DNA from: Ostrea edulis
Lineage: Eukaryota
DNA: 64,000 bases
Direction of reading: 5' to 3'
Assembly (NCBI RefSeq): GCF_947568905.1
Contig: NC_079172.1
Span: 43,214,001 to 43,278,000, forward strand
Every line of letters begins with the position of its first letter. The first letter of the stretch is position 1. The translations under genes and the position numbers were made by a program. Below are positions 2,243-61,937 of the stretch, in pieces. A model generated the notes under the pieces. That model saw only the letters and a list, made by a program, of their open reading frames with translations, was not told the DNA's origin and searched no databases.

Positions 2243-2246
2243 TTAA

Positions 2247-20866: not shown

Positions 20867-21026
20867 GTATCGCTTTTAAAAAGAATTCTTAAAAAGTATA
20901 TGTAACATTAAAAAAAATTGTTTAAGAAGTAGAGAACTTGAAAGTGAAAAGGAAGTGCCAGGAAATGTTCAGAATGCAGGACAGAATGCAAGATCGAGTT
21001 GCACCATTTACCCTACTGGGACTAAC

Positions 21027-23435: not shown

Positions 23436-25707
23436 AGATGAATCTCCGGAAAGAACTGAACATCGCAGAGAATGTGGAACTGCACAAGGTAAGGGACGGT
23501 TTGGATTTGGATATGTAATTGAAACTGAACGCTTCTTTTGACTCGATAAATTTCTGTAATAGGTTTTTAACAACGACCTCGCTTCGATGTCTCGACATAA
23601 ACTTGGAAACCGACATCAATCACCTATTGCTTCTGTGGCACGGAGGCAGTGCGGTGTGTAGGTCTTAATGCACTTTAACGACTTATCGGCCATACATCCT
23701 ATGAATGACCACGAATTTTCCACACCATTTTGGGAATGGGGCCTGGGCCTTTAGAATTGGGAATTTTAACAGCATTTTGTCCAAATTGGGAATTTTAGAA
23801 ATTCAGTTTTACAACATATTTCTTAAACTACGCTCTTTTTTCAATAAAAAGAACATTTTCTCTTTATTCATGGAAATTTTCTTATCTTAATATTCTGTAT
23901 TTATACTTTTGAATACTAGATGAAATTTTTTTCAGTAGAAAAAAATATCGATGAAAATTTTAAAGTATATTGTATTGCTCTGAAATTTAATTGACATAAA
24001 CAGCCCAACCATATATAAATTATTTTTTAAATCATGATCCAGTTCATCATGAAACTGATACTATCTATGCCAATATATATACTTGTTCAATGAGTAGGAA
24101 AAGCACCAGGCATGGGAAGTTATATTTTCATATCCAATAAAATCATTTTGTAAAGTAAATATATCTCTAAATGTACATGTTATCTTCAAAGATTTATTTT
24201 CATACAAAGTACACGGAAAATACATTCTAAATATATATGATATTTACTTAATAACTCTCAGATAGGTAAAGGAAGTGGGTACAATAAGTGAAGCAACAAT
24301 ATAGCCTGTATTAATCAAAGAGAAAAATGGAGGAAATTCGGATTTATCGAACAGTTGCAGATATTTCTAGAGTGTTTTATAAGATGAACTATGATGGCAG
24401 TGCTGCTGAATTAGTTTTATGGAGAAAATTTGACGACAATAGAATCATGTAACATGTATTTTTCAAAGAAAATGAACAATCTAGTTAATTACTGCACTTT
24501 GAACAGGTGTACCGACGGACGAAAATTTCAGGTAGACCTTCCGATCTTTTGGTGGTCTCGGACCTCCGGTCCACAATTTGTGTCAAACCAATAAAATATA
24601 TTTTTTTCATTTGATAACTTTTTTTTAATCATTCCACTTTCCCCATGACATTTATTTGACTTGAATTGGAAAATTTTGCAGACAAATTGGGGGAAAATGC
24701 TACAATTTTTTTTTTCGGCCCCGACAACAGGGTGGAAAATCCCTTTAACAAGCCCAATGTCCAATTCCGCATCACCGATGACCAGGGTGTAGCAGACGAA
24801 ATTTTAGACATGTACACTAGGCCCCTAGTAACTAGGCCTAAAAATTGTAAATGTTTACAGAGATAGACTTCTGTTGTTAGCGAGAGCGATTGCTAGATGT
24901 GTATTGCCTTTAACAAAATGTTCATACGCACAGCCGACATCAATCACCTATGGCTGCTGTGGCACGGATGCAGTACGGTATGTAGGTCTTAATGCACTTT
25001 TGACTGTTGTGGATTTATGCAGTGATGGTAATCGCCGTGATTAAATTTTCCAACACATCTGCAAGTTTAACAGGAAACAGATCATTCACTACAGATTTGG
25101 TAGAACTCCTGACAATATGCCGGGTTTACACTCCATTTTCTTTCTGGCTACGTGCCTGAAATGCAGTTTTTTCGGTTGTGAATGTTTTATTTATTAACCC
25201 ATCTCATTGTATCTTGCATCATTTTTTACACCTCAATGCGACGAAGACACAAAGTTAGCTAGGCTCCAGTCCCCAAAATGTCCTTCCGGAAAGACCCAAG
25301 TTCAAATTTAAAACGTTTTTGGGGATCAATTTGTGGTACATCCCGATTATAGATACGAGTATCTCATCTCCAAGACCACAACGATCTCTCAGATTGAAAA
25401 CTTGAATACGTCTTTGTTTACCCTTAATATGAAACAGAAAATGCATGTTAAGTGAAATTCATTTTTTGACCAATATGGTGCTTCATACTATTTTCTTAGT
25501 CTCAAAGAGACGAAGCACGTGTAATCATTTAGGGTGACATAAGATTTTATGCCCCAAAACCTTTACAATTTAAAGTTCGAGAATCAACGGCGAGTTAAAA
25601 ATCACGGGATTTTCATATTTTATAAAACTAAAGTATATGAAAGCACTAGAAAATTGTTCATGATTTTTCAATTTTATTTCGTGACTTAGATATCACAGAA
25701 GACCGTC

Positions 25708-28127
25708 TTATTCACATCGTCCGTTGAATTCCGTACATCTACTGTTGGATTTCCGGATATTTCCCATTTCCTCCATTTTGATGACGTTGCTGTTAAGGAA
25801 TTCAAATAAGGACTGCAGATACTGGAGTTGATGTGGTGCTACAATCGTTTATAAAATCATAAGTACAGTTATACATGTAAATGTACGGAAGCATATCAAT
25901 GTCATAAACTAAAAATAGATACTGTTGCGGCCCTAATATGCTTCCGTAGTATTATGCACACTGATCTACCAAAATTTTTCTATACCAAGATTTCACAAGA
26001 ACATCTTACATTAGACTCACTGATGTTTTCCACGATTTAGTGTAAAGTTTTGATCATTTATGTCGAAGTTTTAGTGTAAAGTTATCGTTTAAATGACTTG
26101 TGCGTTTCCCATGATTGGGTCCATCGTTAGAAATAAATTGCAATTTTTTTTCCAAATACATACCAAGATACTTAGACATAAAGTTTGTGATGTCAGCTGT
26201 ATTTCCGGTGCTCATGTGGTTCTCTACTTCCTCGAGGTGAAACATGACCGACTTGACGTAGTCAGTGTACACTTGAAGGATGGTAGTAATGGCAGGGGTG
26301 GCGTCTGTAGTCAGGTAGGTAGGAAGGAACTTCCTCACCCAGGCCTCTGTCTCCGTTAGGGGGTTGGCAACAGGAAACCTATTCAAGATAACATTTTCCA
26401 TTAGAATTCTATATACATTCAGAATTATAAAGGCGTTCTTTTTCTTGCGAATCCGACATTTGGCAATAAGGAGAAATTGCAAAAAGGGACAAATGTAAAA
26501 ATCATTTTTTATGCTTACGTTTCTTGAAAATGGCTAGCAATTCCATGGTGGAATTGCCATAGATGATTCATGCTGGGACATTTAAAGAGAAAGTGATTGT
26601 CTGTCAAAAGTTGATTTAGTTTCCCATCGAACACGCTTGGGGACCATTTATTCTCCTCAGCCATGCTCATGAGCATCTTCATTTTCCCAAGGAATTCCTC
26701 GATATCTGAAACATTGCAAAAAAAAAAAAAAAGACTGTTTAGACGATCTCTAATTGATTTGAATATATATCTATTTAGTTGAGAAGATTTGAGGGGATAT
26801 AGAAATACCTTGCAATTGGAAATGACCAAGGTGATCAATGACCTGTCCGTATGTGTATGACTGCGCTGCCGAAAGAATTCGCTGGGCGACGTTATTCACA
26901 TTGGCTGTGTCCATTATCCAGCTCTCTAGAATCTTCCTCACGCGCATGTTCATATTCTGCTCATTGGTCATTTCAGGCGATTTCTGCTTCAAAACATCTA
27001 AATAGAAAATTAATGTATATGTTAATGTATATGATGTAGATTTGATCGATACCTAGTATATTAGAATTGCCATATTTCATCGATAAAACTAATTGGGGAG
27101 ATTTAAAACTCCATTGTAATTTTAATGATATAACTTATATGAACTTTCATGGAAGAAATTCTGGACTTAAAATTAGCCAAAGGTTAGTGTGTAAAAGTTA
27201 TTAGAAAATATGAACTGCTTACCCTTACAGTGGTAAATATGAACATCGGACAGATATTTTCTAAAACACTTTAAGATAGTGTATTGGAATCAGAAACGTT
27301 AGCAAATACTTTTGATCCCCCACGAAACGGACGCGAATTTTAGAAAATGTTTATGCGAGTACCATGCATTAAATCAGTTAATAGAGAATATTTGTGTTAG
27401 TAATCAAGTTCACTTTTACCATACTTACAGAAAACTATTTGGTTGAGTTTTGTAGTTGCGCACTGGAAATGGGCATTCAATAGTTCCCCCGCAATGTTGC
27501 CTAAAGCCCGTTCTCTGAACATCACTTGGTCACTTCTGTACCATGCGCTCAATTTTTCCACAATATCATGTTGTGTTAAAGGCATCTCCACTGAGAATTC
27601 AAACGATATTGATATAAAAACCATTCAAGCTTTTGCATGCTTATTTTTTATTAAATGTTTTGGCCTTACATGTGTATGGTCCAACTGGGAAACTGACGAA
27701 GTGTGGCCTCAGAAGCTTGCCCAACATTCTGGCGCCGGGGACAGGGAATTCTGGCGTAGACTCGCTCCTTGGTTCGATACGGCTCATCGAGTACTCTGGC
27801 ATATCCACATAATCTACCTGCCGCCGTAAGCTTCCTACGAGTCTCTCGAGTTGTCCGACAATGACACGTAGCTCATCATCAGAACCAATAGGCTTCGAGA
27901 GTGAACCTGAACGAAAATAGAATAGTTCATATAAACACAAGTCTTCTGTTAAATTTCACTATGGTGACAATACGTTCACAACATTCCGTGCGTGTTCGAA
28001 TGGTTTAACCCCTTTAGATATAAAGCTCGGAAATACTCAATACATTTGAAATAGTGGAAATATAGTAACGAAATATCTTACCGTGAAATACTACGAACAA
28101 AACCACGAGGACTTTCAAGAACTCCAT
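25708..28127 (-). CDS. Uncharacterised secreted protein, 7 exons, 388 aa (copy A)
   Basis: Exons (-): 28127-28082, 27906-27670, 27590-27429, 26997-26809, 26705-26519, 26378-26164, 25838-25708 (1167 nt, GT-AG, phases consistent). N-terminus MEFLKVLVVLFVVFHGSLS-KP is a signal-peptide pattern. TATAAAA upstream, AATAAA at 25678-25673. Confidence 0.88.
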
Positions 28128-28195
28128 GCTTCGCTTGTTTGGTGTGACTTCTATCACCTGTTGTCTCCTAATACTCGCACTCACTCGCTCACTCC

Positions 28196-28202
28196 TTTTA
28201 TA
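28196..28202 (-). promoter_or_regulatory. TATA box of the secreted-protein gene (copy A)
   Basis: TATAAAA ~70 nt upstream of the ATG at 28127; conserved in copy B at 50297-50303. Confidence 0.7.
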
Positions 28203-28608
28203 TCCACCCGGCGTCGCGCTGTATAACAATGGACCGTTAAAATTTGATGACACGCGCAATTTTGGTTTAGGAGGGATTTCAAGGATGTAATTCGTAATTA
28301 GATTTAGCTATTTCATTATCCCCACTCCGTATATTGTAGAAATGAATCTTTAGAGTGTGTATATTAAAAAGATTTTTACTACTAAAGAAAATGCACTTAT
28401 GCGCATACTTATATATTGGAAGGAAAATGAAAAAATACATAATTGCAATATCCTTGCATAGGCCTCTTCTAGATGTTAAATTAGGAATTTCGTCACGTTT
28501 ATCCCGTGAGTGTGTCACGGGTGTATCTTGATTTCATGTAGTTTATTGTCATTTATTTATTTGTAAATTATAAATTTCCTTATTAGCAATAGTGCAATAT
28601 GGTATTAG

Positions 28609-28662
<54 letters not shown>

Positions 28663-29345
28663 ATCATATCTTTACATGATCATACAATGTACACATGCAT
28701 CCTCTCCCAAGGACTTAAATGCCACTTTACCGTGAACATAATATCATTACGTTAGCAGGGGTGGATCTAAGAATTGCGATAAAGGGGGCGTAACTTTTTT
28801 AGGCAGGGGGTCTGGGGGCGGCCTTTCGCCCCCCCCCCCACCCACCCCCCACCCCCACCCCCGTTTCAGGGCTATGAATAGGTCTCCTATGCAGGCATTA
28901 TTATTTTCTGTCATTTTTGGTAAGGTGAAATTAATAAGATGACGCAACTTTTAAGGGTTTTTGGGAAAAGTGTAAGTTCTCCCAGTAAAAATAATTCAAT
29001 ATATAAAAAAAGATTTTTTTCATTTATTTCTCCAAGAGTGGAAGAATTAATTGCTTCTTCTATCGTAAGTCATTACAATTATTTCTTAGAAAAATTCCTT
29101 AACTGGCAGTTAATTACAATCAGAAATAGTTAATTTTCTATCTATTCCTTATAAGACTATGAGTGGCGCAAAGGGCAAAAACATCACATAAGAGAAAATA
29201 AAAAAGTTCAATTTCAATGACAATTACATGCTTAATCAACTGACGTTTTTGCAAAACAAATATACATGAAAGCCACATTAACGGTCTGGTATGTGACAAA
29301 CAGACGTAACTGCAAAATAAACGGTTATCGAACAATATGCATTAA

Positions 29346-30531
29346 AAGAGGCCCATGGGCCATATCGCTCACCTGAGCTATATTGGCCCTGTCATTGTTC
29401 AAGGTCTCAAGGTCAAACACCAAAGTATAACAATGTCTTACCATAAAGAATCTATATATACAAAGTATGAAAGCCCTACCTAAAATAGTTCTGGATATAT
29501 TTAATAGGTTATGTTTTCTAAAAAGTAGGTCAACTCAGAGTTCAAAGCCACAAGATCAAAGGGCATGATATGGAATGAAAGGTCTTACTATAAGACATTG
29601 ATATAAAAGATATGAAAGATATACCTTTAATAGTTCAGGACATATTGAATTGGTCACAATTTTATTAAAAGTAGGTCAAACGTCCAGGTCGAGGTCACAA
29701 GATCGCACACTGTAAAATCACATGATAGGTCCTTCCATAACGAATGTATAAACAAAATATGAAAGCCCTAGCTTAAATAGTTCAAGATAAAATTTATAAA
29801 GATTTTTCCTACATACAAACTTTGATCACCTATTGTGGCCCCATCCTAACCACGAGGACCATGATTTGAACAAACTTCAATCTACTCTATGTCAGGAAGA
29901 TTTTATGTGAATTTCCAATTTTCTGACCCAGCGGTTCTTGAGAAGAAGGTTGTTTTAAAAAAATCTCAATGTATCTTAAATATAAAATTTTGATCCCCTA
30001 TTGTGGCCCCACCCTACCCACGGGGATCATGATTTGAACTCGAATTTGCAATATATCATTGAGCTCTCATGTAAATTTCCATTTTTTCCCCTGGCCCGGT
30101 GATTCTTGAGAAGATTTTAAAAGATTTTTCCTATATATTTGCATGTAAAACTTTATTCTCTCTTGTGGCCCCACCATACCACCGGAGGCCATGATTTGAG
30201 CAAACTTGAATCTGCACAATATCAGGAAGCTTTCATGTAAATTTCAACTTTACTGGCCCGATGCTTCTTGAAAAGATTTTTAAATGACCCTACCCAAGTT
30301 TGCATTTTCGTATTTATCTCCCCTTTTAAGGGGGCGGCTCTTCATTTGAACAAACTCAAAGCGCTTTACCCAAGAATGCTTTGTGCCAAGTTTAATTGAA
30401 ATTGGCCAAGCGGTTCTGGAGAATAAGTCGAAAATGTAAACAGTTTACGGACAGACAGGGGACAGACAGACGGACGCCGGACGAAAAGTGATCGAAAAAG
30501 TTCACTTGAGCTTTCAGCTTGGGTGAGCTAA
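29346..30531 (+). mobile_element. Helentron-associated non-autonomous element (HINE-like) with internal tandem subrepeats
   Basis: Starts AAGAGGCCCATGGGCCATATCGCTCACCTGAG; internal TTGTGGCCCC...CCATGATTTGAAC repeats; GACA microsatellite; ends CACTTGAGCTTTCAGCTTGGGTGAGCTAA. Family recognised from memory of oyster repeats. Confidence 0.7.
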
Positions 30532-31352
30532 CAAGACAAACCACTCAATACACAGCAAATGATTTTATATGCACAACAAACAGTGTTATTTTGCAAATGA
30601 CAATAAAATCGAGATAAATGGTTTCTCGCCATATATATACATACATTGAAATGAAGATTCATAAACGCGTGATGAACAGACAATGGATGAGTAAACAGTC
30701 ATCGGGTGGCGCCCGTGAATTTTTACCTCGCAGATTTTTGTGAAATAGGTAAACATACATAATAACAAAGAATGATATTTTGTACATTTTCGGAAATAAA
30801 GAACAAAAATGGCCCTAAAAGAGATCCCTGAGGAATACCTGAATGTGTAGATCTTGGAGAAGATGTAAATCCATCTAGGACCACTCAATGTGACCTGTTG
30901 GTTAAATAGCTTTCTACCCATTTCATTATTTGTTTTGACATACCATAGATTTGTATCTTATAAACGAGATACCTATGTGTCAGATTCTATCAAAGGCTTT
31001 TGCAATGTCACAAAATATAAACTTTACATCTTTGTCAAGATTTGGAATAATTGTATTATAAATTTCAATACGTTGATTTGTTCTTGAATCATCTTGTTGG
31101 AACCCAGACTAATATTTATAAATAATATCATGATCCAAAACATAGTTATTTAAGGAATATTCAATTATGATTTTTTTTCGAGTATTTTGTACGGAGCTCA
31201 TACCTGTAGCATAGGTCTAAATTTGTGGTATTTTACCTTCAGCTGGTGACGTCTCAATATGAGTGAGAAAAAATCTCAAGAGACATAAAACGAAACATAA
31301 TTGACTACTAAATACATGTTACTTTCATAAAGGATAATTTTACCAGTCTTAA

Positions 31353-31693
31353 GGTCACCCACTACACTAAAGCTTATACTCGTTATGACACTACGTCACA
31401 AGAAGGCGATTTAAATGTTTTGTGAAATTATTTGTATCGATTGATTTGTTTGTCCATCATCGTAGCTCAGTGGTTAAAGCATTGGGTTGGTGAATCGCAA
31501 ATCTCGAGTTCAAATCCGCAAGAGTCTTTTGTTCATATATGTTGAAATGAATTTTTTGAAAATCATGTTTTTATCCAAATTTGCGTATTTTCTGCCTTTT
31601 TGGCATATATACTTATTATATATCATCAAATCTTTTATGATTAAACCAATTCGTACTAATTTGATAAACTATTTCAAGGTGTAGTGAGCCACC
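31353..31693. mobile_element. 341-bp TTAA-flanked MITE containing a tRNA-like (SINE-head) segment
   Basis: TTAA at 31349-31352 and 31694-31697. Imperfect TIR (cleaner in copy B: GGTAGCTCACTACAC vs GGTGGCTCACTACAC). Internal TAGCTCAGTGG (A box) and GAGTTCAAATCC (B box). Confidence 0.7.
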
Positions 31694-32671
31694 TTAAATG
31701 TAACAACACGATGATTATGAAAAAAGAAAAAGTAAGCAAGCTCACATGCCCCAAAATTGCTTGGGAATGTCTCACATAATGAATGGTAATGCTATGCATT
31801 ACTGCAAGAACGTGCTAGACGACCTCGAAATAATAAGTTTAAAAGGGGCATAACTCCAAAAAAAATATTGAATCAGAATTTTCAGGAAATATGCACAACT
31901 ACACAATGTGTCCTTATTAACGACAAAGTTTCACGAAATTCTGTCGAGTGGTCTTAGAGAATTTCGAGTCCGTCTGTCCTGTTCTTGTCAACGTTGTATT
32001 GACAAGAACAGGACAGACGGGCTCGAAATTCTAAGTTCGAAAGGGGTATGACTTATGGTTATGGTTATTTCCATATATGGGGAGCGGAGTGAACTAAAAA
32101 CCCTTGGCCAGCGAAGATGGTAAAAGCGAGTAATGAAAACCAAAATCCTATTTCACAGAAGACTACACAAAAAGTTTTAAATCAACATTTCAAATTATGA
32201 CAACGAAAGAGAACAACTTGTAAACGAAGTGAAACAAAGTTTGACCATAGGCGCTTGGGTCACGAATAATGTAAATTTAAAAGTTTTGTTTTAGTATACG
32301 GTAGGTGAAATTAACTTTCAAACGTTTATGAAATTAAATTTTTACAGCATACCAGTATATAATAAGCAAAATAGATTACAGAAAATAAAAACCCAAATCA
32401 TGGAAGTTGAAAAAAAAATGTTACAACCATAGTTCAAATTTGTTCGATAGCTCTATTTTTTTTTTTTTTTTTTTTTTATTTTTACATTATCCATGACCCG
32501 AGCGCCTATGACTTTGACTGACGGACAAATAGACGTATAGACATAGAAAATGGCGCTTCACACTCCCCCTTCCAATCTACCGGTAGGGGCACTCGAATAC
32601 CATGATAAAGTTCTGTCAAGTCGTTTGATGTTAAACTTCAAAAACATATCTGGCACCACAAACATTTATAT

Positions 32672-33244
32672 CTATTTCAAATAGATGGATTTCCTAACAC
32701 TACTGTTAATCGCCTCCAATGCGAAAGAACTCCATTCTAAACACGGAACATTGGAAATGTCGAACGACGCCCCGATACCAAAACAGAGGAACAGCAATCC
32801 TCTTCCTTTCGATTTCTTCTGGTGACCAGGATAACTCTCCATCAGCTCTTTGGCAGCTTTTATAGAAAAGGTTTGAAATTTGAAAGAAGGCTTAGTAATC
32901 TTGAATGATTTCTTTGTCACTGGGTTTGAGATTCCTAGGTATTGCATCACAATTTTCTGGGACGAAATTTCAATTTTCATGCACATATCTGGAAAAAATT
33001 ACAAAATAAAGCTCAACAGTAGTATACGGACAAATAGTTCTTTTCAAAATTTCTTTTTATGAATTAATATGCAATTATCGTTTTAATCTTTATATGACTA
33101 CACAAGTAGTAGTATAAAAAAATATATCACAAAGCCGATAGAGTATACTCGACTAGTTTCTTCAATAATTTTTTCAGGAGTATATAAAAACATTCATAAT
33201 ACGTTTGATACTTTACTTCAACTTGGAATTCATTGCTTTGCATA

Positions 33245-33283
<39 letters not shown>

Positions 33284-36200
33284 CGTGTTTTTGGATTTTA
33301 TTCTATGGGGTAGAGAACATTATGAATAATGTATTTGAGTACTTATCATTCCGACAGTCTATATTTGAAAATAAAAGTCGAACTTTCATAATTCAAAGAT
33401 TCAAACATGTCATCTCCGTCTTCGATCCCGTGCATTAAGAAAAAGCGCTCGTCAGGGCTATCCAGGCTGAAGGCTGTATGTGGCTATGGAGATAATTATA
33501 GTTATTAAAGGGTTTTAAAAATCATACAGGTTGAATTATTGCTTAACAGATCGATCAGTTTTTCGTTAGACTAAAGCCATATTTGTACGACATTGAATAT
33601 CTTGTTTGATAATGGATGCCGTTACTTTAGTAAGGAGTAACTCGGGAAATTCGGTTGATTTTCTTTACTAGAGAAATGAGATTATTGAACAGAATTAATG
33701 CACATTCAATTTTATAATCACCTTGAGTATCACAGCGGCGGACTCTTCACCAAGCGTTGAAGAAATGTCGAAGAGTTGACCTTCATCCTCGAATATAAAA
33801 ACGCATCCAAAGTACGCCTGATACCGCCTCTTGGAATCCATTGCTTTGCACTTAAAAAACCGGACGCCAAATTTAACTACAACACAAAATCAATCCACAT
33901 AAAGAACACGCAAGACTAGATAAACTACAGAAGAACGATTAAGTTGTGAGAACTTCTCTCTGAATCTGTTGTACAATTTATAAAATACGTTCAAACCAAA
34001 TTACATGTGAATATCTATTAAATAGTGCAAAAGAGTAAGCTGGGCGTATTCCGGTACCGAGTTCTTATACTACGATGTTATTTTTGGACTGAAAGCGGCG
34101 TGGAGAACGAGCAGTGATCAATCTCATAAATCCCATAAAAATCAATTTAATGAAAAATTATCATAGTAACGATCTTGTAAAAAAGCTAGCAATAAGCCTA
34201 CATTCAAGCTGCAGACATATTTACATTACAAATTACATGTATAATCAAAGTACTGAAAGTATTTACATTACAAATTACATTTTAAAAAACCACTGAGAAG
34301 GTTTGGTTTCGTCAACTGGTGGATTATTCTGCCAAAACATTGATAAACGAGACTAGCACGTGACCTTGTAAATCAGTGTATAATATAGTAAACTAGCATG
34401 TAAAACTAGGATAAACTAGCCTAGCACGTGACCTTGTAAATCAGTGTATAATATAGTAAATTAGCATGTAAAGCTAGGATAAACTAGACTACCAGGTGAT
34501 CTTGTAAATCAGTGTATAATAGTAAATTAGCATGTAAAGCTAGGATAAAGTAGACTACCACGTGATCTTGTAAGTAAACTAGCATGTAAAGCTAGGATAA
34601 ACTAGACTACCACGTGATCTTGTAAATCAGTGTATAATAGTAAATTAGCATGTAAAGCTAGGATAAACTAGACTACCGGGTGATCTTGTAAGTCAGAGTA
34701 TAATATAGTAAATTAGCATGTAAAGCTAGGATAAACTAGACTACCACGTGATCTTGTAAATCAGTGTATAATAGTAAATTAGCATGTAAAGCTAAGATAA
34801 AGTAGACTACCACGTGATCTTGTAAATCAGTGTATAATAGTAAATTAGCATGTAAAGCTAAGATAAAGTAGACTACCACGTGATCTTGTAAATCAGTGTA
34901 TAATAGTAAATTAGCATGTAAAGCTAGAATAAACTAGACTATCAGGTGATCTTGTAAGTCAGAGTATGATATAGTAAACTAACATGTAAATCTAGGATAA
35001 ACTAGTCTACCACGTGTTCTTGTAAATCAGTGTATAATATAGTAAACTAGCATGTAAAGCTAGGATAAACTAGACTACCACGTGATCTTGTAAATCAGTG
35101 TATAATAGTAAATTAGCATGTAAATCTAGGATTAACTAGTCTACCACGTGTTCTTGTAAATCAGTGTATAATATAGTAAACTAGCATGTAAAGCTAGGAT
35201 AAACTAGACTACCACGTGATCTTGTAAATCAGTGTATAATATAGTAAATTAGCATGTAAAGCTAGGATAAACTAGACTACCACGTGATCTTGTAAATCAG
35301 TGTATAATAGTAAATTAGCATGTAAAGCTAGGATAAACTAGACTACCACGTGATCTTGTAAATCAGTGTATAATATAGTAAACTAGCATGTAAAGCTACT
35401 TAACGGGGTTTTACGCTAGAAATAAAATGGAATTCGGCTGTAGTGTTGAAGACACAATAAAACGAGTGGCTAGAGTTTAGAATCTACTAACGGTATAGTC
35501 TACTTTTATCCTGATGGAATCAGTGAGTGTGTTGATACATTGAGAGTCGATTGAACAGTCACCTGTTTCTGTGAATACATATGTAAGTTGTGACTTCTGT
35601 ATACTTATAATAACACAAGGTACTTAGCTTGAAATGACACTGAATGATACCCTCCTGAGAATGCCAGAGAAACTCTTCGAATTGTCCATTTTCGCGACCC
35701 TCGATATTTTCCCCACACAATATGGTCATCATGGTCAGTGTTCGGTCTTTTCTATTACTGAGTTTTACTTACACAAGCTCATCTCTCGTCTTTCTCTGAT
35801 AGGGTATCCATAAACACATGTTATGTTTCTATCCACACACAAGTACACCCCGGTCTCGCACGCCACGCGAATATGGAAGTTCCGAGGTTCGTATGTTGTC
35901 CAGGTCATGTCTTTGAACTTTCTAGGGGTCAGATCAATGTTTGACAAATCCTTCGTACAGTGGCATCTACTTGTCTCCCCTATAACGAGTTTGATCTCAA
36001 GTACATCAGTTCTATTTCCTTTGTTTAACCATCGCCACAACACCTATAATCACAAACAGTCAATTAACAGCAAAGGCTGTTCAATACCAAATGCTGATAA
36101 AAGGAATTAGAAACTGCAATCGATATTTGCATATATGATAATCACCTAAATGCTAGTACATATATACGTAGACACTTATTTACTTTTTTAGAAACGGTTC

Positions 36201-37270
36201 TACACTATAATGATCATGGTGGTCCTATTTTTGTGGCAATTTTAGACTGCAAATAAAAGCGTACGATAGCGAGCGGAGGAATGGTATTCTGGTCAAATTC
36301 TACAATTTAGATGTAATGGGTAAGATTTGGTCAATTATAGACGATTGTCATATCGATAATGAAAGCATTGTTATTGTTAACTGGTTTCCTAGCCAACAAG
36401 AAGGGATTCTATCAGGTTTACTTCATTGTGTGTTTATCAATGAATTAGTACATACATGTATGTGACCGGTCGACAGGGGGTGCTTATTCCTACTAGACAC
36501 CTGACCCCACCTCTGGTGTATCCAGGGGTCCGTTGTTATCCAACTCTCTATTATGTATTGTTTATAGGAGTTATGGGATTGATCAATGTTCGTTATCTTC
36601 ACCTTTCATGCTAGATATACAAAATCAACAAATCCAACATTAGCTGATATTGGTAAAGTAAAGTAGAGAAGACTAGTGTATTCTATTGTGGGTACAGCCG
36701 TTCATGGGTAGTGCAATCCTTTACAACACGTAACAGATTTTTGAGTTGGTTTTACTGGATATATTTCAATTCTCACTTACTACCGACACCCCTACTTCTG
36801 TCCTAATATTTTTCAGCAGTTGTCGGACGTGGCTACAACTGTAATCCTTGATGTTTTCGTCGTTGATCTGGACAATTCTATCGTAACGTCTGTTGGAGGG
36901 AATAAGGAAATATACTGAACGGTTAAAACACCAACAACAAGAAACTGTTAGACTGATCTCCTTCCCTGCTTTAAATTAACATACAAATGTGTAACTGAAA
37001 ATAACGTAAAGTACAAAGAAAAATACATTTTGTCGGTTTTACGTTTTGTACATCCCGGAAGTGAATTTGTACTAACTTGAGACTGTCCTTGACGGAGTCT
37101 GGTCCCACGTTTTCTATGTAGTGGTGGTATTCTCCAGTCTTTGAGGGATTTTCTGACGATTTTACTCTGCATATTTTTTGTCCGGAGATCACCATCTTTG
37201 ACGCTTTGATTTTTATTTTAGTTTGCTGTTGGGGCGACGGCGTTGATCCTTCACTTGAACTCGACGAACT
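32672..37270 (-). CDS. Leaderless PDZ-like + IL-1-like beta-trefoil protein (copy A), at least 6 coding exons
   Basis: Exons (-): 37270-37027, 36914-36781, 36043-35773, 33876-33722, 33483-33384, 32988-32672 (1221 nt open, GT-AG, phases consistent; first in-frame ATG 37195, true start may be upstream). PDZ-like: YIENVGPDS...YDRIVQIND...SHVRQLLKN...VSVVLWR. IL-1-like: DERFFLMHGIEDGDDMFESLNYENMCM vs IL-1beta [27 protein letters not shown]. Exon 5 donor (GTTCGA) is weak in this copy. Confidence 0.8.
34351..35398. repeat. Minisatellite, ~66-68 bp unit, ~16 copies, in intron 3 of the IL-1-like gene
   Basis: Unit ACTAGACTACCACGTGATCTTGTAAATCAGTGTATAAT(AT)AGTAAA(C/T)TAGCATGTAAAGCTAGGATAA; head-to-tail, no spacers. 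Confidence 0.95.
36461..36609 (+). mobile_element. Penelope-like element terminal-repeat fragment
   Basis: TGTGACCGGTCGACAGGGG...CTCTGGTGTATCCAGGGGTCCG...CGTTATCTTCACCTTTCAT; similar to the reverse complement of the 3' part of 52210-52625. Confidence 0.55.
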
Positions 37271-37662
37271 CTAATGAATTTAATAAAAATTATATATCGC
37301 TCGTCAAACGCTGGCATATCTTATGTAAGAGAAATAAAAACTAAAATCTTGTGAATTATCGACTTGCAAAAAGTATGACATACTGGTAACTTTCCTTAGG
37401 TTAACCTTCAAATAACACGCATTTTAGAAAACGGGGATGTTAACGTCGTCTGCCAGAAAAGCACCTCACAGGCCTTATGTGTAACCTGAGTAGTAGTTAA
37501 AAGTATCACTAGTCCCAAGTTTTTATGACGTAAAGGGCGAGGGGTACCGATTGGTATATTCGTATATAGGTGAAGTAATGAGGCCTCGACGGGGAGTTTG
37601 TCAACGAAATAAGTTTTTTGTTTCACGTCATTACTCGCCAGGTGGCGTTACTGTTCTAGGGG

Positions 37663-38638
37663 CACTAACAAAACCGCTCAGTACATTCTATGCAACTCCC
37701 GGAAGTATTGATTTCTACCCCTGTGCGCATGCCCCAAATGACGTATTTATTTACAAACACAATAACGACAACACAGTATGCAATCAGCTGCTAGCTGACC
37801 GCCTGAGCCGGGTTGGAAATAGTTAATGCAATGTTACTGTTGATTGATTACTTTGGCGCTTTGGTAAATAAAATAGGTTAAATAAAACTTTTGTTTATTT
37901 TGGAACTTTGTCAAATCATTTGAAATATCAATCCTGAAAAGTTCCAAGACTTCATCCTCGTATGGTTTCAACGGATATGATTTTTTTTATTACACTTTAA
38001 TTCACAAACCCTGCAAATGTGCACCAAATTTACCAAAATGTGCATCCATATTTATTACAACTAGGCGCAGGCTAAACAAAGAAATACACAATATTCACAT
38101 TGCACAATTCTGAACACAGCATGCAGCAATACGAGCGCGAGCTGAGTGATTTACAAATGGCTGACAAAATGGCCGACAAGACCTTGCTCAACCGCTTGGG
38201 TTATGTAAACATGACCCTAAATTCTGAATAAAGACTCCCGACATGTCAACAATGAAACGAAAGTAGAATATTCAATTTATTCATACCAAAATACCTCTTT
38301 CTTGTACATAAATCAGCTTTTTATTAATGAATTTTCAAAGTTAGCATGTCATTTTAAGTCCTAAACACACCACTACTTCAAAAACTAATATTTCGGCTTC
38401 TATTTTCCCAATTTTCACCATTTCTTCTTCACGAACTAGCTACGTGACAGGAAATTCAATTTCCAACCCTGCGCATGTTCACCGGGTATTTCCCTTTTCC
38501 ATATTTAGTTGAAAACGAACAGATATAGCGATCCAATCATAATACGGGATTTAGTGAAATCCCGTTCCGGCTTTGGATTTTACGCAATATGTTTACCTCA
38601 TTATGCAAGAACAAAAGTTGCATAGGGTTTTGTTAGTG
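37663..38638. mobile_element. 976-bp non-autonomous element with CAC...GTG termini and 5-bp TSD (Transib/RAG-like architecture)
   Basis: Perfect 13-bp TIR CACTAACAAAACC. TSD AGGGG at 37658-37662 and 38639-38643. Absent from copy B, where the site reads TTCTAGGGGGTATAT. Confidence 0.8.
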
Positions 38639-39545
38639 AGGGGGTATATATGAATAAGCAGCATGGCGTCACAGTATGCGAGATGGCCTGTGACACGACT
38701 AAAACGCGTACTATCAGAAAGAGGGGCAATTACACGCGGCCGCAAGGAACAGCTTGTGGAAAGGTTAGTATACAAATTACAATGATTGTAATATTTTGAT
38801 GTCTTTCTCTCAAAAATATGTAGAAAATGTTACAAAATCCCTTCTGTTTATCATGCAGATCCCTGTCGAGGTACGAAAATTGGAATTCGCTAAACAGCTT
38901 TAAAGACCCAATCTTAAGTTACCCCCCCCCCCCCCCCTCCGAGACATACATGTACATGTGTCTGTTATCTGACGTCCTAAAATATTATCTGTATCCTGAT
39001 CAATGGTAAGCTACACGCCAATCAAACTTTTAACAATACGCCTGCAGGTAACCTCAGCGAGTTTGGTCGAGGCTGGATACTCGGTCCAAATATCCAAGCT
39101 GTCCGCCGCTGCTATATTTTCTCATAATAATATTCAAATTTTTAAAAATCTCTTGGACAATGCAATTTAATCATTATATTTTTCAATATTCTCTCTAGAC
39201 AGGTGTTGTAAATTACACAATCAGAATTCAAACAATAATTTGCACATTAATTTCTAAAACATATAACTTACTGAAATAATTTTTATTAATAATTTATAAC
39301 AGCTTTATATTTATGCATTTATTTTAAAAAGAAATTGTTCATTGACCCATTGAATTAGAGGAAGAGATGGGGGGGGGGGGATAGACCGTGTCAGATCAGA
39401 TAACAATTACCATATATAAGCTACACCCAGACCCAGTAAGACACCCTTAGACATTGGGGGGGGGGGGTGTCTTTAAAATTAACAATAAACATATCGTCAA
39501 TCCCATATTTATACCACTGTTTAGCTTTCTTTAAACTTATTTCAG

Positions 39546-40002: not shown

Positions 40003-40053
<51 letters not shown>

Positions 40054-40406
40054 CTTTCAATTTCATCACTTCTATTTTCTTTAAAAGTTTGCGGGCATAT
40101 ATCACACGATATATGCCCGGAAACATTCCGGCCCGCAAACATTACGTCACAATCAAATTTCTACGCCGTTAATTTTTAAATTTTTCGTGTTTTTCATCTT
40201 TTACTCAGTTAAACCGATAAAGATATTGTTAAAAATAAAATTATTGTTAGTTTCTAAATGAAATTGAAAGTATATAATAAAAAGGTTATAGACTTTGTAT
40301 GGGAAATATGACGACCTCGTTTTTTGTCGCGAATGGACCTCGCAAGCTCGGTCCGTCTACACGCCAAAAAACTCGGTCGTCATATTTTCCCATACAAAGT
40401 CTATAA

Positions 40407-40450
<44 letters not shown>

Positions 40451-57511: not shown

Positions 57512-58072
57512 CTATTTCAAATAGATGGATTTCCTAACACTACTGTTAATCGCCTCCAATGCGAAAGAACTCCATTCTAAACACGGAACTTTGGAAATGT
57601 CGAACGACGCCCCGATACCAAAACAGAGGAACAGCAATCCTCTTCCTTTCGATTTCTTCTTGTGACCAGGATAACCCTCCATCAGCTCTTTGGCAGCTTT
57701 TATAGAAAAGGTTTGAAATTTGAAAGAAGGCTTAGTAATCTTGAATGATTTCTTTGTCACTGGGTTTGAGATTCCTAGGTATTGCATCACAATTTTCTGG
57801 GACGAAATTTCAATTTTCATGCACATATCTGGAAAAAATTACAAAATAAAGCTCAACAGTAGTATACGGACAAATAGTTCTTTTCAAAATTTCTTTTTAT
57901 GAATTAATATGCAATTATCGTTTTAATCTTTATATGACTAAACAAGTAGTAGTATAAAAAAAATATATCACAAAGAGTATACTCGACTAGTTTCTTCAAT
58001 AATTTTTTCAGGAGTATATAAAAACATTCATAATACGTTTGATACTTTACTTCAACTTGGAATTCATTGCTT

Positions 58073-58131
<59 letters not shown>

Positions 58132-61100
58132 CGTGTTTTTGGATTTTATTCTATGGGGTAGAGAACATTATGAATAATGTATTTGAGTACTTATCATACC
58201 GACAGTCTATATTTGAAAATAAAAGTCGTACTTTCATAATTCAAAGATTCAAACACGTCAACTCCGTCTTCGATCCCGTGCATTAAGAAAAAGCGCTCGT
58301 CAGGGCTATCCAGGCTGAATGTTGTATGTGGCTATGGAGATAATTATAGTTATTAAAAGGTTTTAAAAATCATACAGGTTCAATTATTGCTTGACAGATC
58401 GATCAGTTTTTCGTTAGACTAAAGCCATATTTGTACGACATTGAATATCTTGTTTGATAATGGATGCCGTTACTTTAGTAAGGAGTAACTCTGGAAATTC
58501 GGTTGATTTTCTTTATTACAGAGATGAGATTATTGAACAGAATTAATGCACATTCAATTTTATAATCACCTTGAGTATCACAGCGGCGGACTCCTCACCA
58601 AGCGTTGAAGAAATGTCGTAGAGTTGACCTTCATCCTCGAATATAAAAACGCATCCATAGTACGCCTGATAACGCCTCTTGGAATCCATTGCTTTGCACT
58701 TAAAAAACCGGACGCCAAATTTAACTACAACACAAAATCAATCCACATAAAGAACACGCAAGACTAGATAAACTACAGAAGAACGATTAAGTTGTGAGAA
58801 CTTCTTTCTGAATCTGTTGTACAATTTATAAAATACGTTCAAACCAAATTACATGTGAATAGCTATTAAATAGTGCAATAGAGTAAGCTGGACGTATTCC
58901 GGTACCGAGTTCTTATACTACGATGTTATTTTTGGACTGAAAGCGGCATGGAGAACGAGCAGTGATCAATTTCATAAATCGCATAAAAATTAATTTAATG
59001 AAAAATTATCATAGTAAAGATATTGTTAAAAAGCTAGCAATAAGCCTACATTCAAGCTGCAGACATATTTACATTACAAATTACATGTATAATCAAAGTA
59101 CTGAAAGTATTTACATTACAAATTACATTTAAGAAAACCACCGAGGAGAAGGTTTGGTTTCGTCAACTGGTGGATTATTCTGTCAAAACATTGATAAACG
59201 AGACTAGCACATGACCTTGTAAATCAGTGTATAATATAGTAAACTAGCATGTAAAGCTAGGATAAATTAGACTACCACGTGATCTTGTAAGTCAGAGTAT
59301 AATATAGTAAACTAGCATGTAAAGCTAGGATAAACTAGACTACCACGTGATCTTGTAAATCAGAGTATAATATAGTAAACTAGCATGTAAATCTAGGATA
59401 AACTAGTCTACCACGTGTTCTTGTAAATCAGTGTATAATAGTAAACTAGTATGTAAAGCTAGGATAAACTAGACTAGCACATGATCTTGTAAATCAGAGT
59501 ATAATATAGTAAACTACCATGTAAAGCTAGGATAAACTAGACTACCACGTGATCTTGTAAGTCAGAGTATAATATAGTAAACTAGCATGTAAATCTAGGA
59601 TAAATTAGTCTACCACGTGATCTTGTAAATCAGTGTATAATAGTAAACTAGCATGTAAAGCTAGGATAAACTAGACTATCACGTGATCTTGTAAATCAGA
59701 GAATAATATAGTAAACTAGCATGTAAAGCTAGGATAAACTAGACTTCCACGTGATCTTGTAAGTCAGAGTATAATATAGTAAACTAGCATGTAAAGCTAG
59801 GATAAACTAAACTACCACGTGATCTTGTAAGTCACAGTATAATATAGTAAACTAGCATGTAAAGCTAGGATAAACTAAACTACCACGTGATCTTGTAAGT
59901 CAGAGTATAATATTGTAAACTAGCATGTAAAGCTAGGATAAACTAGACTACAACGTGATCTTGTAAATCAGAGTATGATATAGTAAACTAGCATGTAAAG
60001 CTTAGATAAACTAAACTACCACGTGATCTTGTAAATCAGTGTATAATATAGTAAATTAGCATGCAAAGCTACTTAGCGGGGTTTTACGCTAGAAATAAAA
60101 TGAAATTCGACTGTAGTGTTGAAGACACAATAAAACGAGTGGCTAGAGTTTAGAATCTACTAAAGGTATAGTCTACTTTCATCCTGATGGAATCAGTGAG
60201 TTTGTTGATACATTGAGGGTCGATTACACAGGCACCTGTTTCTGTGAATACATATGTAAGTTGTGACATCTGTATACTCATAATAACACAAAGTACTTAG
60301 CTTGAAATGACACTGAATGATACCCTCCTGAGAATGCCAGAGAAACTTTTCGAATTGTCCATTTTCGCGACCCTCGATATTTTCCCCACACAATATAGTC
60401 ATCATGGTCAGTTTTCGGTCTTTTCTGTTACTGAGTTTTACTTACACATGCTCATCTCTCGTCTTTCTCTGATAGGGTATCCATAAACACATGTTATGTT
60501 TCTATCCACACACAAGTACACCCCGGTCTCGCACGCCACGCGAATATGGTAGTTCCGAGGTTCGTATGTTGTCCAGGTCATGTCTTTGAACTTTCTAGGG
60601 GTCAGATCAATGTTTGACAAATCCTTCGTACAGTGGCATCTACTTGTCTCCCCTATAACGAGTTTGATCTCAAGTACATCAGTTCTATTTCCTTTGTTTA
60701 ACCATCGCCACAACACCTATAATCACAAACAGTCAATTAACAGCAAATGCTGTTCAATATCAAATGCTAATAAAAGGAATTAGAAGCTGCAATCGATATT
60801 TGGATATATGATAATCACCTAAATGCTAGTACATATATACGTAGACACTCATCTACTTTTTTAGAAACGGTTCTACACTATAATGATCATGGTGGTCCTA
60901 TTTTTGTGGCAATTTTAGACTGCAAATAAAAGCTTACGATAGCGAGCGGAGGAATGGTATTCTGGTCAAATTCTACAATTTAGATGTAATGGGTAAGATT
61001 TGATCAATTATAGACGATTGTCATATCGATAATGAAAGCATTGTTATTGTTAACTGGTTTCCTAGCCAACAAGAAGGGATTCTATCAGGTTTACTTCATT

Positions 61101-61937
61101 GTGTGTTTATCAATGAATTAGTACATATGTGACCGGTCGACAGGGGGTGCTTATTCCTACTAGACACCTGACCCCACCTCTGGTGTATCCAGGGGTCCGT
61201 TTTTGTCCAACTCTCTATTATGTATTGTTTATAGGAGTTATGGGATTGAGCACTGTTCGTTATCTTCACCTTTCATGCTAGATATACAAAATCAACAAAT
61301 CCAACATTAGCTGATATTGGTAAAGTAAAGTAGAGAAGACTAGTGTATTCTATTGTGGGTACAGCCGTTCATGGGTAGTGCAATCCTTTACAACACGTAA
61401 CAGATTTTTGAGTTGGTTTTACTGGATAAATTTCAATTCTCACTTACTACCGACACCCCTACTTCTGTCCTAAGATTTTTCAGCAGTTGTCGGACGTGGC
61501 TACAACTGTAATCCTTGATGTTTTCGTCGTTGATCTGGACAATTCTATCGTAACGTCTGTTGGAAGGAATAATGAAATATACTGAACGGTTAAAACACCA
61601 ACAACAAAACATTGTTAGACTGATCTCCTTCCCTACTTTAAATTAACATACAAATGTGTAACTGAAAATAACGTAAAGTACAAAGAAAAATACATTTTGT
61701 CGGTTTTACGTTTTGTACATCCCGGAAGTGAATTTGTACTAACTTGAGACTGTCCTTGACGGAGTCTGGTCCCACGTTTTCTATGTAGTGGTGGTATTCT
61801 CCAGTCTTTGAGGGATTTTCTGACGATTTTACTCTGCATATTTTTTGTCCGGAGATCACCATCTTTGACGCTTTGATTTTTATTTTAGTTTGCTGTTGGG
61901 GCGACGACGTTGATCCTTCACTTGAACTCGACGAACT
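57512..61937 (-). CDS. Leaderless PDZ-like + IL-1-like beta-trefoil protein (copy B)
   Basis: Exons (-): 61937-61694, 61581-61448, 60716-60446, 58724-58570, 58331-58232, 57828-57512; same lengths as copy A, open frame; exon 5 donor GTACGA; first in-frame ATG 61862. Confidence 0.8.
59202..60071. repeat. Minisatellite, ~66-68 bp unit, ~13 copies (copy B)
   Basis: Same unit as 34351-35398, fewer copies. Confidence 0.95.
61128..61275 (+). mobile_element. Penelope-like terminal-repeat fragment (copy B)
   Basis: Counterpart of 36461-36609. Confidence 0.55.

What the first reader, a model, noticed from the sequence alone, without database searches (positions are those of the whole stretch)
32672..37270. 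Candidate invertebrate interleukin-1-like cytokine: PDZ-like domain fused to an IL-1-type beta-trefoil
Seen: six exons splice in phase into a 406-aa open frame with no signal peptide, intact in both copies. The N-terminal part follows the PDZ strand/helix order (KIKIK, YIENVGPDS, YDRIVQIND, SHVRQLLKN, VSVVLWR). The C-terminal part has about 12 short beta-strand-like segments, including NFHIRV, VYLCVD, SLFKF, VILKP and DERFFLMHGIEDGDDMFESLNYENMCM, which lines up with the IL-1 family signature region (IL-1beta [26 protein letters not shown]). Established: IL-1 cytokines are leaderless beta-trefoils matured by cleavage and were long considered vertebrate-specific; I recall reports of divergent invertebrate IL-1-like proteins with PDZ-like N-termini but cannot verify that here. 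Inference: a molluscan pro-IL-1-like molecule, probably annotated only as uncharacterised. This is the strongest novelty candidate in the window.
Basis: partly seen in the sequence, partly recalled or inferred. Interest (0 to 1): 0.9.

Follow-up and report, generated by a model that had tools for sequence, protein, structure and literature searches.

The report
Oyster IL-1-like gene, truncated tandem copies
This is a real spliced flat-oyster gene for a PDZ-like domain joined to an interleukin-1-like beta-trefoil; the family (IL-1anc) was published in 2025-26, and the two copies in this window lack the gene's first coding exon.

Summary
On the minus strand, six exons (37270-32672) splice in frame. 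A second copy (61937-57512) keeps the frame and every splice site. Spliced contigs from a related species reproduce all five junctions, including the doubted 33384/32988. The frame is 381 codons, not 406 (356 from the first Met, 37195). It opens at a real splice acceptor, so it is not a complete gene.

The window is Ostrea edulis. A third copy, 20 kb beyond the window (LOC125658216, 462 aa), has an extra 5' coding exon (81 aa). That exon holds the start codon and a conserved DxxD-G motif, and neither window copy has a counterpart.

The N-terminal domain is PDZ-like by profile search. The C-terminal domain is a beta-trefoil with an invariant FES motif. Oyster homologues give sub-threshold Pfam hits to IL1 and to no other trefoil family, and language-model neighbours are IL-18, IL-33 and IL-1.

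My two AlphaFold models were poor (pLDDT about 46). They cannot separate IL-1 from ricin-type trefoils.

This architecture is the IL-1anc family of Fontenla-Iglesias et al. (preprint 2025; Nat Ecol Evol 2026), already reported in bivalves. I file it as a new member of a known kind. Its function here is inferred, not shown.

The parts
37077..37270 (-). Copy A exon 1 of the window (exon 2 of the full gene). It encodes the Ser/Lys-rich linker and the start of the PDZ-like domain. The acceptor AG is at 37272-37271, the first in-frame ATG is at 37195-37193, and the intron after it is phase 2.
   Evidence: The junctions 37270 (acceptor) and 37077/36889 are seen in spliced contigs (records 4, 6 and 8).
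36781..36889 (-). Copy A exon 2, the core of the PDZ-like domain (YDRIVQIND ... SHVRQLLKN). The intron after it is phase 0.
   Evidence: On its own it hits Pfam PDZ_6 at E 7e-4 and PDZ at E 8e-3. The junctions are, record 6.
35773..36043 (-). Copy A exon 3, covering the end of the PDZ-like domain (VVLWRW), a linker, and trefoil strands about 1-4. The NCBI model XP_056005280.1 starts at the Met at 35908. The intron after it is phase 1.
   Evidence: The junction 35773/33876 is, records 1 and 6.
33722..33876 (-). Copy A exon 4, the middle of the trefoil (FKFGVRFF ... VILK). The intron after it is phase 0.
   Evidence: and records 1 and 6.
33384..33483 (-). Copy A exon 5, holding the DERFF...FES motif region (FES at 33405-33397). 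The intron after it is phase 1, with the weak donor GTTCGA.
   Evidence: The junction 33384/32988 is, record 1. Pfam IL1 hits of homologues map to this region.
32672..32988 (-). Copy A exon 6, with the last trefoil strands (to about 32867), a 62-aa C-terminal tail, and the stop TAG at 32674-32672.
57512..61937 (-). Copy B (LOC130050537), with the same six exons at 61937-61744, 61556-61448, 60716-60446, 58724-58570, 58331-58232 and 57828-57512. Its first in-frame ATG is at 61862. The NCBI model XP_056006723.1 uses an alternative terminal exon at 60233-60153.
37271..37519 (-). What remains of intron 0 upstream of copy A. Similarity to the full-length copy C ends here (at 62280 for copy B). The 5' coding exon of copy C has no counterpart further upstream.
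25457..39421 (.). Segmental tandem-duplication unit that carries copy A. Its partner, 47606-64000, carries copy B.

Best explanation
The finding is a genuine spliced gene of Ostrea edulis from the recently described IL-1anc family. Its members are leaderless proteins with a PDZ-like domain, a linker, an IL-1-like 12-strand beta-trefoil carrying the FES motif, and here a 62-aa tail.

The genome holds seven such genes on one chromosome. Three near-identical tandem copies sit at 43.25-43.30 Mb, and four more distant paralogues sit at 45.38-45.46 Mb. The window holds two of the three tandem copies.

Both window copies are 5'-truncated duplicates. They keep every exon for the PDZ-like and trefoil domains, but they lack the first coding exon. 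In the third copy that exon supplies the start codon, a conserved N-terminal region and a conserved caspase-type (D/E)xxD-G motif.

Mechanism, inferred from the family and not shown here:
- The full-length protein would be made as a cytosolic pro-form in haemocytes after immune stimulation.
- It would be cut by a caspase. In oysters the conserved candidate site lies upstream of the PDZ-like domain.
- It would be released without a signal peptide, through gasdermin pores or cell lysis.
- It would signal through Ig-TIR receptors to MyD88 and NF-kB.

The window copies could only make protein from the internal Met (37195 or 61862). That product would be PDZ-like domain plus trefoil without the pro-region. 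Alternatively they make nothing useful.
For: Gene reality:
- The frame and splice sites hold.
- Spliced contigs match all five junctions.
- NCBI protein models exist for all three copies.
- Full-length homologues occur in Saccostrea, Magallana and Crassostrea at 26-33% identity along the whole length.
- Exon boundaries coincide in tblastn.

PDZ-like domain:
- Exon 2 alone hits PDZ_6 at E 7e-4.
- The paralogue P0004 scores 22.8 bits on Pfam PDZ against a cut-off of 23.2.
- The family profile A3 hits solved PDZ domains: InaD-like E 1.3e-4, PSD-95 E 7e-4, Par-3 E 1.5e-3. Nearly all of the 60 listed rows are PDZ proteins.

Beta-trefoil fold:
- The Foldseek rows are nearly all beta-trefoil proteins too.
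- The Atlas's own model of P0012 matches an IL-18 cluster best. TM is 0.81 by the IL-18 model and 0.51 by the query, with 155 residues aligned over 227-389.

IL-1 rather than another trefoil family:
- PF00340 IL1 is the first or only hit for 7 of 9 homologue trefoil domains (E 0.001-0.37). It always covers profile positions 48-100, the DERF..FES..MFMKF stretch.
- No FGF, ricin or Kunitz family appears even at E 10.
- Language-model neighbours of two members only 33% identical are IL-18, IL-33 and IL-1 clusters, 0.77-0.81.
- FES is present in every member that reaches that region, and there is no QxW motif.
- The trefoil introns are phase 1 then phase 0, with the phase-0 intron 26 codons before FES.
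- The architecture, size, motif and lack of a signal peptide meet the published criteria for IL-1anc, which was reported in bivalves (PMC13736523).

Truncation:
- Residues 1-81 of P0012 match only C9:43297000-43297245, upstream of copy C, by protein search and by profile search.
- DNA similarity between copy C and copies A and B stops 250-340 bp upstream of the exon-1 acceptor.
- NCBI models of A and B start at internal Mets.
Against: - The window protein itself gives no Pfam IL1 hit. Every homologue hit is below the gathering score (at most 19.1 bits against 25).
- A profile of the trefoil domain finds no IL-1 chain among PDB sequences.
- Both AlphaFold models are low confidence (pLDDT 45.5 and 46.7).
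- Language-model scores under 0.9 are leads only.
- I could not compare directly with the paper's bivalve sequences, because its Supplementary Table 2 is not held.
- The spliced contigs come from a relative, not from O. edulis, so they do not show that the window copies are expressed.
- dN/dS among the copies is about 1. That fits neutral drift as well as fast immune-gene evolution.
- No cytokine activity, receptor or processing has been shown for any mollusc member.
Confidence: 0.75

Rival explanations
1. The protein is a PDZ-like domain fused to a generic beta-trefoil (lectin-like, protease-inhibitor-like or scaffolding) that is not homologous to IL-1 and does not act as a cytokine. On this reading the FES motif and the weak Pfam hits are convergence or chance.
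For: By shape, ricin-type trefoils tie with or beat the IL-1 members. All sequence links to IL-1 are sub-threshold. Bivalves are rich in beta-trefoil lectins such as SeviL, which also appears among the hits (row 47).
Against: No ricin, FGF or Kunitz Pfam hit appears even at E 10. No QxW repeats are present. IL1 is the sole recurring family, always on the same stretch. IL-18 is the top match for the Atlas's own model and for the Foldseek 3Di+AA search of my second model. Lectins of that kind are usually secreted or lack a PDZ fusion. The PDZ-plus-trefoil fusion with FES is the published IL-1anc signature.
Confidence: 0.15
2. The two window copies are dead-on-arrival partial duplicates. Having lost the promoter, start codon and first coding exon, they are untranslated or make only aberrant products. 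Only copy C, outside the window, is the working gene.
For: The first coding exon is absent from both copies. The NCBI models are fragments: 235 aa starting inside exon 3, and 194 aa ending in an intronic alternative exon. dN/dS is about 1. Copy A has a weakened intron-5 donor, GTTCGA. No O. edulis RNA run was found among the holders.
Against: Both frames and all splice sites are intact. The copies are so young (0.3-1.3% exon divergence) that intactness and dN/dS say little either way. An in-frame Met with a good context (A at -3, G at +4) at 37195 would give the whole PDZ-like domain plus trefoil, and a TATATA box lies about 25 bp upstream of the exon. Gnomon built models for both copies. Mosaic intron similarity suggests continuing gene conversion with copy C.
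Confidence: 0.5
3. The three 'copies' are an assembly artefact (uncollapsed haplotypes) rather than true tandem genes.
For: Divergence between copies (0.3-2%) lies in the range of oyster heterozygosity.
Against: The copies lie 20-25 kb apart in one orientation, with different sequence between them. A and B share an upstream context that C lacks, and C alone has the 5' exon. NCBI annotated three separate loci.
Confidence: 0.05

Closest known systems
IL-1anc family (Fontenla-Iglesias et al., bioRxiv 2025, PMC12338702; Nat Ecol Evol 2026, PMC13736523), including bivalve members PmaxIL-1.1-1.3 and CvirIL-1.1-1.2
   Same: It has an N-terminal PDZ-type domain plus a C-terminal IL-1-like beta-trefoil and is under 500 aa. 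The F/LES motif sits in the ninth strand and there is no signal peptide. The trefoil is encoded by 3-5 exons (here 4). It forms lineage-specific tandem expansions and is annotated as uncharacterised.
   Different: Ostrea edulis is not named in the paper's main text. This species has seven loci, against the two reported for C. virginica. The two window copies lack the first coding exon. The conserved caspase-type DxxD-G motif of oyster members lies upstream of the PDZ-like domain, whereas the mapped sea-urchin site (SpurIL-1.3 Asp184) lies between the N-terminal region and the trefoil. The window-type proteins carry a 62-aa C-terminal tail and a short insertion before the last strand.
Vertebrate IL-18, IL-1beta and IL-33 (Pfam PF00340 IL1, PF15095 IL33_bt)
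   Same: It shares the beta-trefoil fold and the leaderless pro-protein design. The FES-centred stretch gives the only Pfam similarity. IL-18 is the best match of the Atlas model. From my memory of human IL1B, the last two trefoil introns there are also phase 1 then phase 0, with the phase-0 intron about 28 codons before FES (26 here).
   Different: No score reaches the Pfam gathering threshold. It has a PDZ-like domain in place of the IL-1 propeptide. No receptor-binding or caspase-1 site equivalence has been shown.
Teleost nIL-1F (lumpfish, PMC7144542)
   Same: It is a PDZ domain plus an IL-1 family domain with seven coding exons and a predicted caspase site. Full-length copy C here also has seven coding exons.
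   Different: The fish protein is recognised by the InterPro IL-1 family domain. The oyster proteins are not.
Ricin-B-type beta-trefoil lectins (for example botulinum HA33, SeviL)
   Different: It has no QxW repeats, no Pfam ricin hit, no signal peptide and a PDZ fusion.

Membership tests
IL-1anc (PMC13736523) | N-terminal PDZ domain | tested here: met
   The family profile A3 hits solved PDZ domains at E 1.3e-4 to 1.5e-3, and nearly all of the 60 listed rows are PDZ proteins. Pfam PDZ and PDZ_6 hits fall just under the cut-offs. Only the second half of the domain is canonical, and the GLGF-type loop is not recognisable by reading.
IL-1anc (PMC13736523) | C-terminal beta-trefoil of about 12 strands | tested here: met
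IL-1anc (PMC13736523) | Trefoil nearer to IL-1, IL-18 and IL-33 than to other trefoil superfamilies | tested here: inconclusive
   Sequence-aware methods favour IL-1: Pfam IL1 is the sole family in 7 of 9 homologues, the language-model neighbours agree, and IL-18 tops Foldseek with model 2. Shape alone ties or favours ricin-type trefoils.
IL-1anc (PMC13736523) | (F/L)ES motif in strand 9 | tested here: met
   FES lies at 33405-33397 in copy A and is present in copies B and C. It is present in every homologue that reaches that region.
IL-1anc (PMC13736523) | No signal peptide and length under 500 aa | tested here: met
   The maximum 12-residue hydropathy in the first 50 aa is 0.4-0.8. Lengths are 462 aa for the full-length copy and 356 aa from the window Met. 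No SignalP-type predictor was available.
IL-1anc (PMC13736523) | Conserved phases of the two central trefoil introns relative to FES, and of the PDZ introns | tested here: inconclusive
   The window gene has PDZ introns of phase 2 and 0 and trefoil introns of phase 1, 0 and 1, with the phase-0 intron 26 codons before FES. The paper's Extended Data Fig. 7 is not held. The human IL1B phases (1, 0) come from memory only.
IL-1anc (PMC13736523) | Sequence homology to the published bivalve members (Supplementary Table 2) | not testable with these tools
   No supplementary files are held for the paper or the preprint.
IL-1anc (PMC13736523) | Immune-induced expression, caspase processing, cytosolic or nuclear pro-form | not testable with these tools
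   No O. edulis RNA run was found. A conserved (D/E)xxD-G motif is present in 12 of the 13 family N-terminal regions I checked, but it lies in the exon missing from the window copies.
Classical IL-1 family (Pfam PF00340) | Score above the Pfam gathering threshold (25 bits) | tested here: not met
   The window-type proteins give no hit. Homologues score 10.9-19.1 bits.
Ricin-B lectin (PF00652 / PF14200) | QxW repeats and a Pfam hit | tested here: not met
   There is no [QN]xW motif in five family trefoil domains and no Pfam hit at E 10.

The most novel reading that the evidence does not exclude
In oysters the conserved caspase-type DxxD-G site sits upstream of the PDZ-like domain, so the processed cytokine would keep its PDZ-like domain. 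This differs from the sea-urchin and mammalian design. The two window copies lost exactly the exon that carries the start codon, the pro-region and that site. If transcribed from their own promoter and translated from Met 37195 or 61862, they would be natural 'pre-processed' IL-1anc variants. Such variants would need no caspase step, making them alarmin-like or antagonist-like paralogues born by partial tandem duplication.
Probability: 0.1. Interest if true: 0.6.

Novelty: new member of a known kind. Interest (0 to 1): 0.38.

Why it matters
IL-1 was long held to be a vertebrate invention. The IL-1anc paper changed that, but it rests on structure prediction and on experiments in sea urchin and lamprey only.

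This locus adds a commercially important, disease-prone bivalve, the European flat oyster, to the family. It has a seven-gene repertoire in two clusters. It also provides clear copy-specific markers for expression studies during Bonamia or Vibrio infection.

The conserved DxxD-G motif and the naturally truncated copies give simple, testable handles on how a PDZ-bearing IL-1 is processed. As a discovery of a new kind of molecule it comes too late, because the family is already described.

Tried and rejected
- Atlas search with exon 3 alone gave no usable hit.
- Pfam on single exons gave only the PDZ hit on exon 2.
- The word-index homologue searches (all three used) returned only oyster proteins. 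The exhaustive representative search with exon 3 gave two true relatives plus chance repeat proteins, P0003 and P0005, which I discarded.
- The trefoil profile and a single paralogue segment against PDB sequences gave no IL-1 chain, only chance rows.
- Two AlphaFold jobs failed to reach usable confidence (pLDDT 45.5 and 46.7). One used the whole C-terminal half with 8 sequences. The other used the trimmed core with 21 rows, including exon fragments of paralogues. Adding the paralogues L011-L013 added little diversity.
- I looked for the missing 5' exon in the window by ORF reading and by tblastn with six homologues and with P0012. Nothing was found. The Ser-rich ORF at 44133-44375 is low-complexity repeat, not an exon.
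- I looked for a linked Ig-TIR receptor gene. The nearest listed TIR match is 217 kb from the second cluster, and none is listed near the window. Only 150 of 230 candidates were scored, so this says little.
- Searching papers for the LOC and XP identifiers found nothing.
- Looking for intron phases in PMC9382457 and PMC7144542 found no numbers in the text.
- The look-up of encoding contigs does not serve the window's own genome.
- I did not use complex prediction, because no binding claim is made.
Full report
**What is there**

Reading the minus strand of 32400-37500 and splicing the six proposed exons in a script gives one open frame of 381 codons. The exons are 37270-37077, 36889-36781, 36043-35773, 33876-33722, 33483-33384 and 32988-32672. 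The frame ends at TAG 32674-32672, and every boundary has AG/GT. The first Met is at 37195, which leaves 356 aa.

tblastn and blastn of the exons against the window find a second copy at 61937-57512. It has identical exon boundaries and an intact frame. It differs at 15 of 1146 nt, which is 12 amino-acid changes and 2 silent codons. The two copies lie in a segmental duplication, 25457-39421 against 47606-64000.

**Transcript evidence**

Among public runs, X3-X6 hold most of the stretch (57-80% of the sampled words), and the two I laid, X3 and X6, cover the introns like genomic DNA. X1 and X2, from a different organism about 95% identical, hold only the exons.

Their contigs are intron-less and join exactly where predicted (table 8).
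- Record 1 runs 32600-32988 | 33384-33483 | 33722-33876 | 35773-36037.
- Record 6 runs 33409-33483 | 33722-33876 | 35773-36043 | 36782-36888 | 37076-37202.
- Record 4 runs 36815-36888 | 37076-37270.

Records 4 and 8 continue 214 and 243 nt beyond 37270. That makes 37270 a true acceptor, and the gene has at least one more exon upstream.

One caveat applies to copy A. Its intron-5 donor is GTTCGA, while copies B and C have GTACGA.

**Identity of the genome and of the gene models**

An exhaustive search with exon 3 returned a 235-aa protein identical to spliced exons 3-6. Its source name is 'uncharacterized protein LOC130050166 [Ostrea edulis]'. Its 90% cluster holds two more O. edulis proteins.
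- LOC130050537 (194 aa) is copy B. It starts at the Met equivalent to 37195 and ends in an alternative exon at 60233-60153.
- LOC125658216 (462 aa, P0012) is a full-length protein whose residues 82-462 correspond to the window frame.

A six-frame search of the window's own genome places three tandem copies on one chromosome. Copies A and B are in the window. Copy C lies 20 kb beyond its end.

Residues 1-81 of P0012 match only one place, just upstream of copy C. This holds with the protein and with a family profile. DNA similarity between copy C and copies A and B stops 250-340 bp upstream of the exon-1 acceptor. Reading and ORF-scanning the 10 kb upstream of copy A found no substitute exon.

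The two window copies are therefore 5'-truncated duplicates. They keep the PDZ-like and trefoil exons but lack the start codon and the first 81 residues.

The same profile search shows four more distant paralogues at 45.38-45.46 Mb with the same seven-exon layout.

**The N-terminal domain**

Exon 2 alone gives Pfam PDZ_6 at E 7e-4. The paralogue P0004 reaches 22.8 bits on PDZ against a cut-off of 23.2.

A profile of eight family members (A3) against all PDB sequences returns mostly PDZ domains. InaD-like scores E 1.3e-4, PSD-95 E 7e-4 and Par-3 E 1.5e-3, followed by dozens of further PDZ chains and a few chance rows.

By reading, the second half is canonical (DRIVQIN, the SHVRQLLKN helix, VSVVLWR). 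The first half is short and lacks a GLGF-type loop, so 'PDZ-like' is the right word. KIKIK lies before the domain.

**The C-terminal domain**

No Pfam family reaches threshold. Still, PF00340 (IL1) is the first or only hit for 7 of 9 homologue trefoil domains (E 0.001-0.37). It always falls on profile positions 48-100, the DERF...FES...MFMKF stretch. No FGF, ricin or Kunitz family appears even at E 10. The window-type protein itself gives no IL1 hit.

FES is present in every member that reaches that region, and no QxW motif is present.

Language-model neighbours of P0012 and of the 33%-identical Saccostrea protein P0002 are IL-18, IL-33 and IL-1 clusters at 0.77-0.81. These are leads only. The Atlas's own model of P0012 matches an IL-18 cluster best (TM 0.81 by the IL-18 model, 0.51 by the query, 155 residues over 227-389), followed by AbfB and ricin trefoils.

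My two AlphaFold runs were poor (pLDDT 45.5 and 46.7), because only oyster sequences could be gathered.
- Foldseek with model 1 lists mostly trefoil proteins, with IL-18 giving the best TM (about 0.5).
- With model 2, the five best Foldseek rows are IL-18, but at E 0.07-0.15.
- A shape-only Atlas search of model 1 gives ricin-type clusters at TM below 0.5.

My conclusion is that the fold is a beta-trefoil. The assignment to IL-1 rests on sequence-level signals, the motif, the gene structure and the domain fusion. It does not rest on my structures.

**Gene structure**

The intron phases are 0 (after the missing first exon), 2 and 0 (PDZ-like domain), then 1, 0 and 1 (trefoil). The phase-0 trefoil intron lies 26 codons before FES.

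From memory, human IL1B has phase-1 and phase-0 introns flanking a 131-nt exon, with FES about 28 codons after the phase-0 intron. I could not verify this here, and the paper's figure is not held.

**Comparison with the literature**

The paper defines IL-1anc by these features: an N-terminal PDZ domain plus a C-terminal IL-1 trefoil, under 500 aa, the (F/L)ES motif in strand 9, no signal peptide, and conserved intron phasing. [quoted passage not shown]

It shows immune induction in sea urchin, lamprey and Nematostella, cytosolic or nuclear pro-forms, and caspase cleavage of one sea-urchin protein at Asp184.

The oyster family here meets every criterion I could test. Ostrea does not occur in the main text. 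None of the LOC identifiers occurs in the searchable literature. The paper's sequences are not held.

**Additional observations on the family**

Alignment of eight full-length members shows an invariant Asp-Gly in the N-terminal exon. It is preceded by a caspase-like tetrapeptide: DEVD-G in Saccostrea, DEMD-G in P0012 residues 64-68, and HEVD, NEVD, DSAD, DAAD and DNLD elsewhere. The O. edulis paralogues carry DAAD-G, DDID-G, DAID-G and DELD-D. No Asp is conserved in the linker between the PDZ-like domain and the trefoil. If this is the processing site, the product would keep the PDZ-like domain. The window copies lack this exon.

The three tandem copies are very young. Exon divergence is 0.35-1.3% and intron divergence 0.8-2.1%. 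The pattern is mosaic: intron 1 is identical in B and C, while the other introns are nearly identical in A and C. This suggests gene conversion. dN/dS is about 1 (A-B 1.05, B-C 0.88, A-C four replacements and no silent change). With so few changes this cannot separate drift from fast immune-gene evolution.

**Verdict**

The family is already published, so this is a new member of a known kind. There is a local twist: the window holds two 5'-truncated tandem copies, and the complete gene lies just outside it. Cytokine function in molluscs remains inferred.

Noticed in passing
window 34342-35398 (copy A intron 3); 59193-60071 (copy B): A tandem array of a 66-68-bp unit sits inside intron 3, with about 16 copies at 92% match. 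Its length differs between the gene copies.
   Followed up: partly
window 34031-34189 and 36416-36733: Two intronic segments have word depths a thousand-fold or more above their neighbours in all four runs, with many contig joints. These are high-copy interspersed repeats, possibly MITE- or SINE-like.
   Followed up: no
window 38660-38790 (+), within the block 38640-39421 that is duplicated at 63217-64000: A plus-strand exon-like ORF starts at an ATG (MASQYARWPVTRLKRVLSERGAITRGRKEQLVE...) and ends at a GT donor. It lies upstream of both truncated copies. It may be the first exon of another gene or of a transposon gene.
   Followed up: no
window 40290-40420, flanked by (TA)n at 40006-40053 and 40409-40445: A near-perfect palindrome of about 60 bp per arm lies between two TA microsatellites, like a small foldback or MITE element.
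   Followed up: no
window 62281-62713 and 62782-63216: A large inverted repeat (about 435-bp arms, 94% identical) lies just upstream of copy B, at the point where similarity to copies A and C breaks.
   Followed up: no
window 12071-12922 (+) and 14335-15474 (-): These ORFs carry Helicase_C (E 3e-16) and DUF6589 (E 6e-14). That fits the helicase-bearing transposon noted by the scan at 10182-20875.
   Followed up: partly
window 379-2247 and 3738-5603: A direct repeat of about 1.9 kb at 88.6% identity.
   Followed up: no
G000:C9:45380216-45460325 (loci L011-L014, L017, L018): A second cluster of four family paralogues lies 2.1 Mb away, all on the minus strand with seven exons. One of them (L011) is the orthologue of the Saccostrea protein P0002. 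An orphan N-terminal exon lies at 45426299-45426490.
   Followed up: partly
L016 (Magallana gigas OY970752.1:23214703-23239576): The M. gigas homologue LOC105329011 is preceded in the same orientation by a gene for a 419-aa protein without Pfam hits. This is probably another tandem family member.
   Followed up: no
window 60153-60233 (copy B); equivalent 35480-35557 in copy A: The NCBI model of copy B uses this intronic alternative terminal exon, which would cut the protein after about four trefoil strands.
   Followed up: partly
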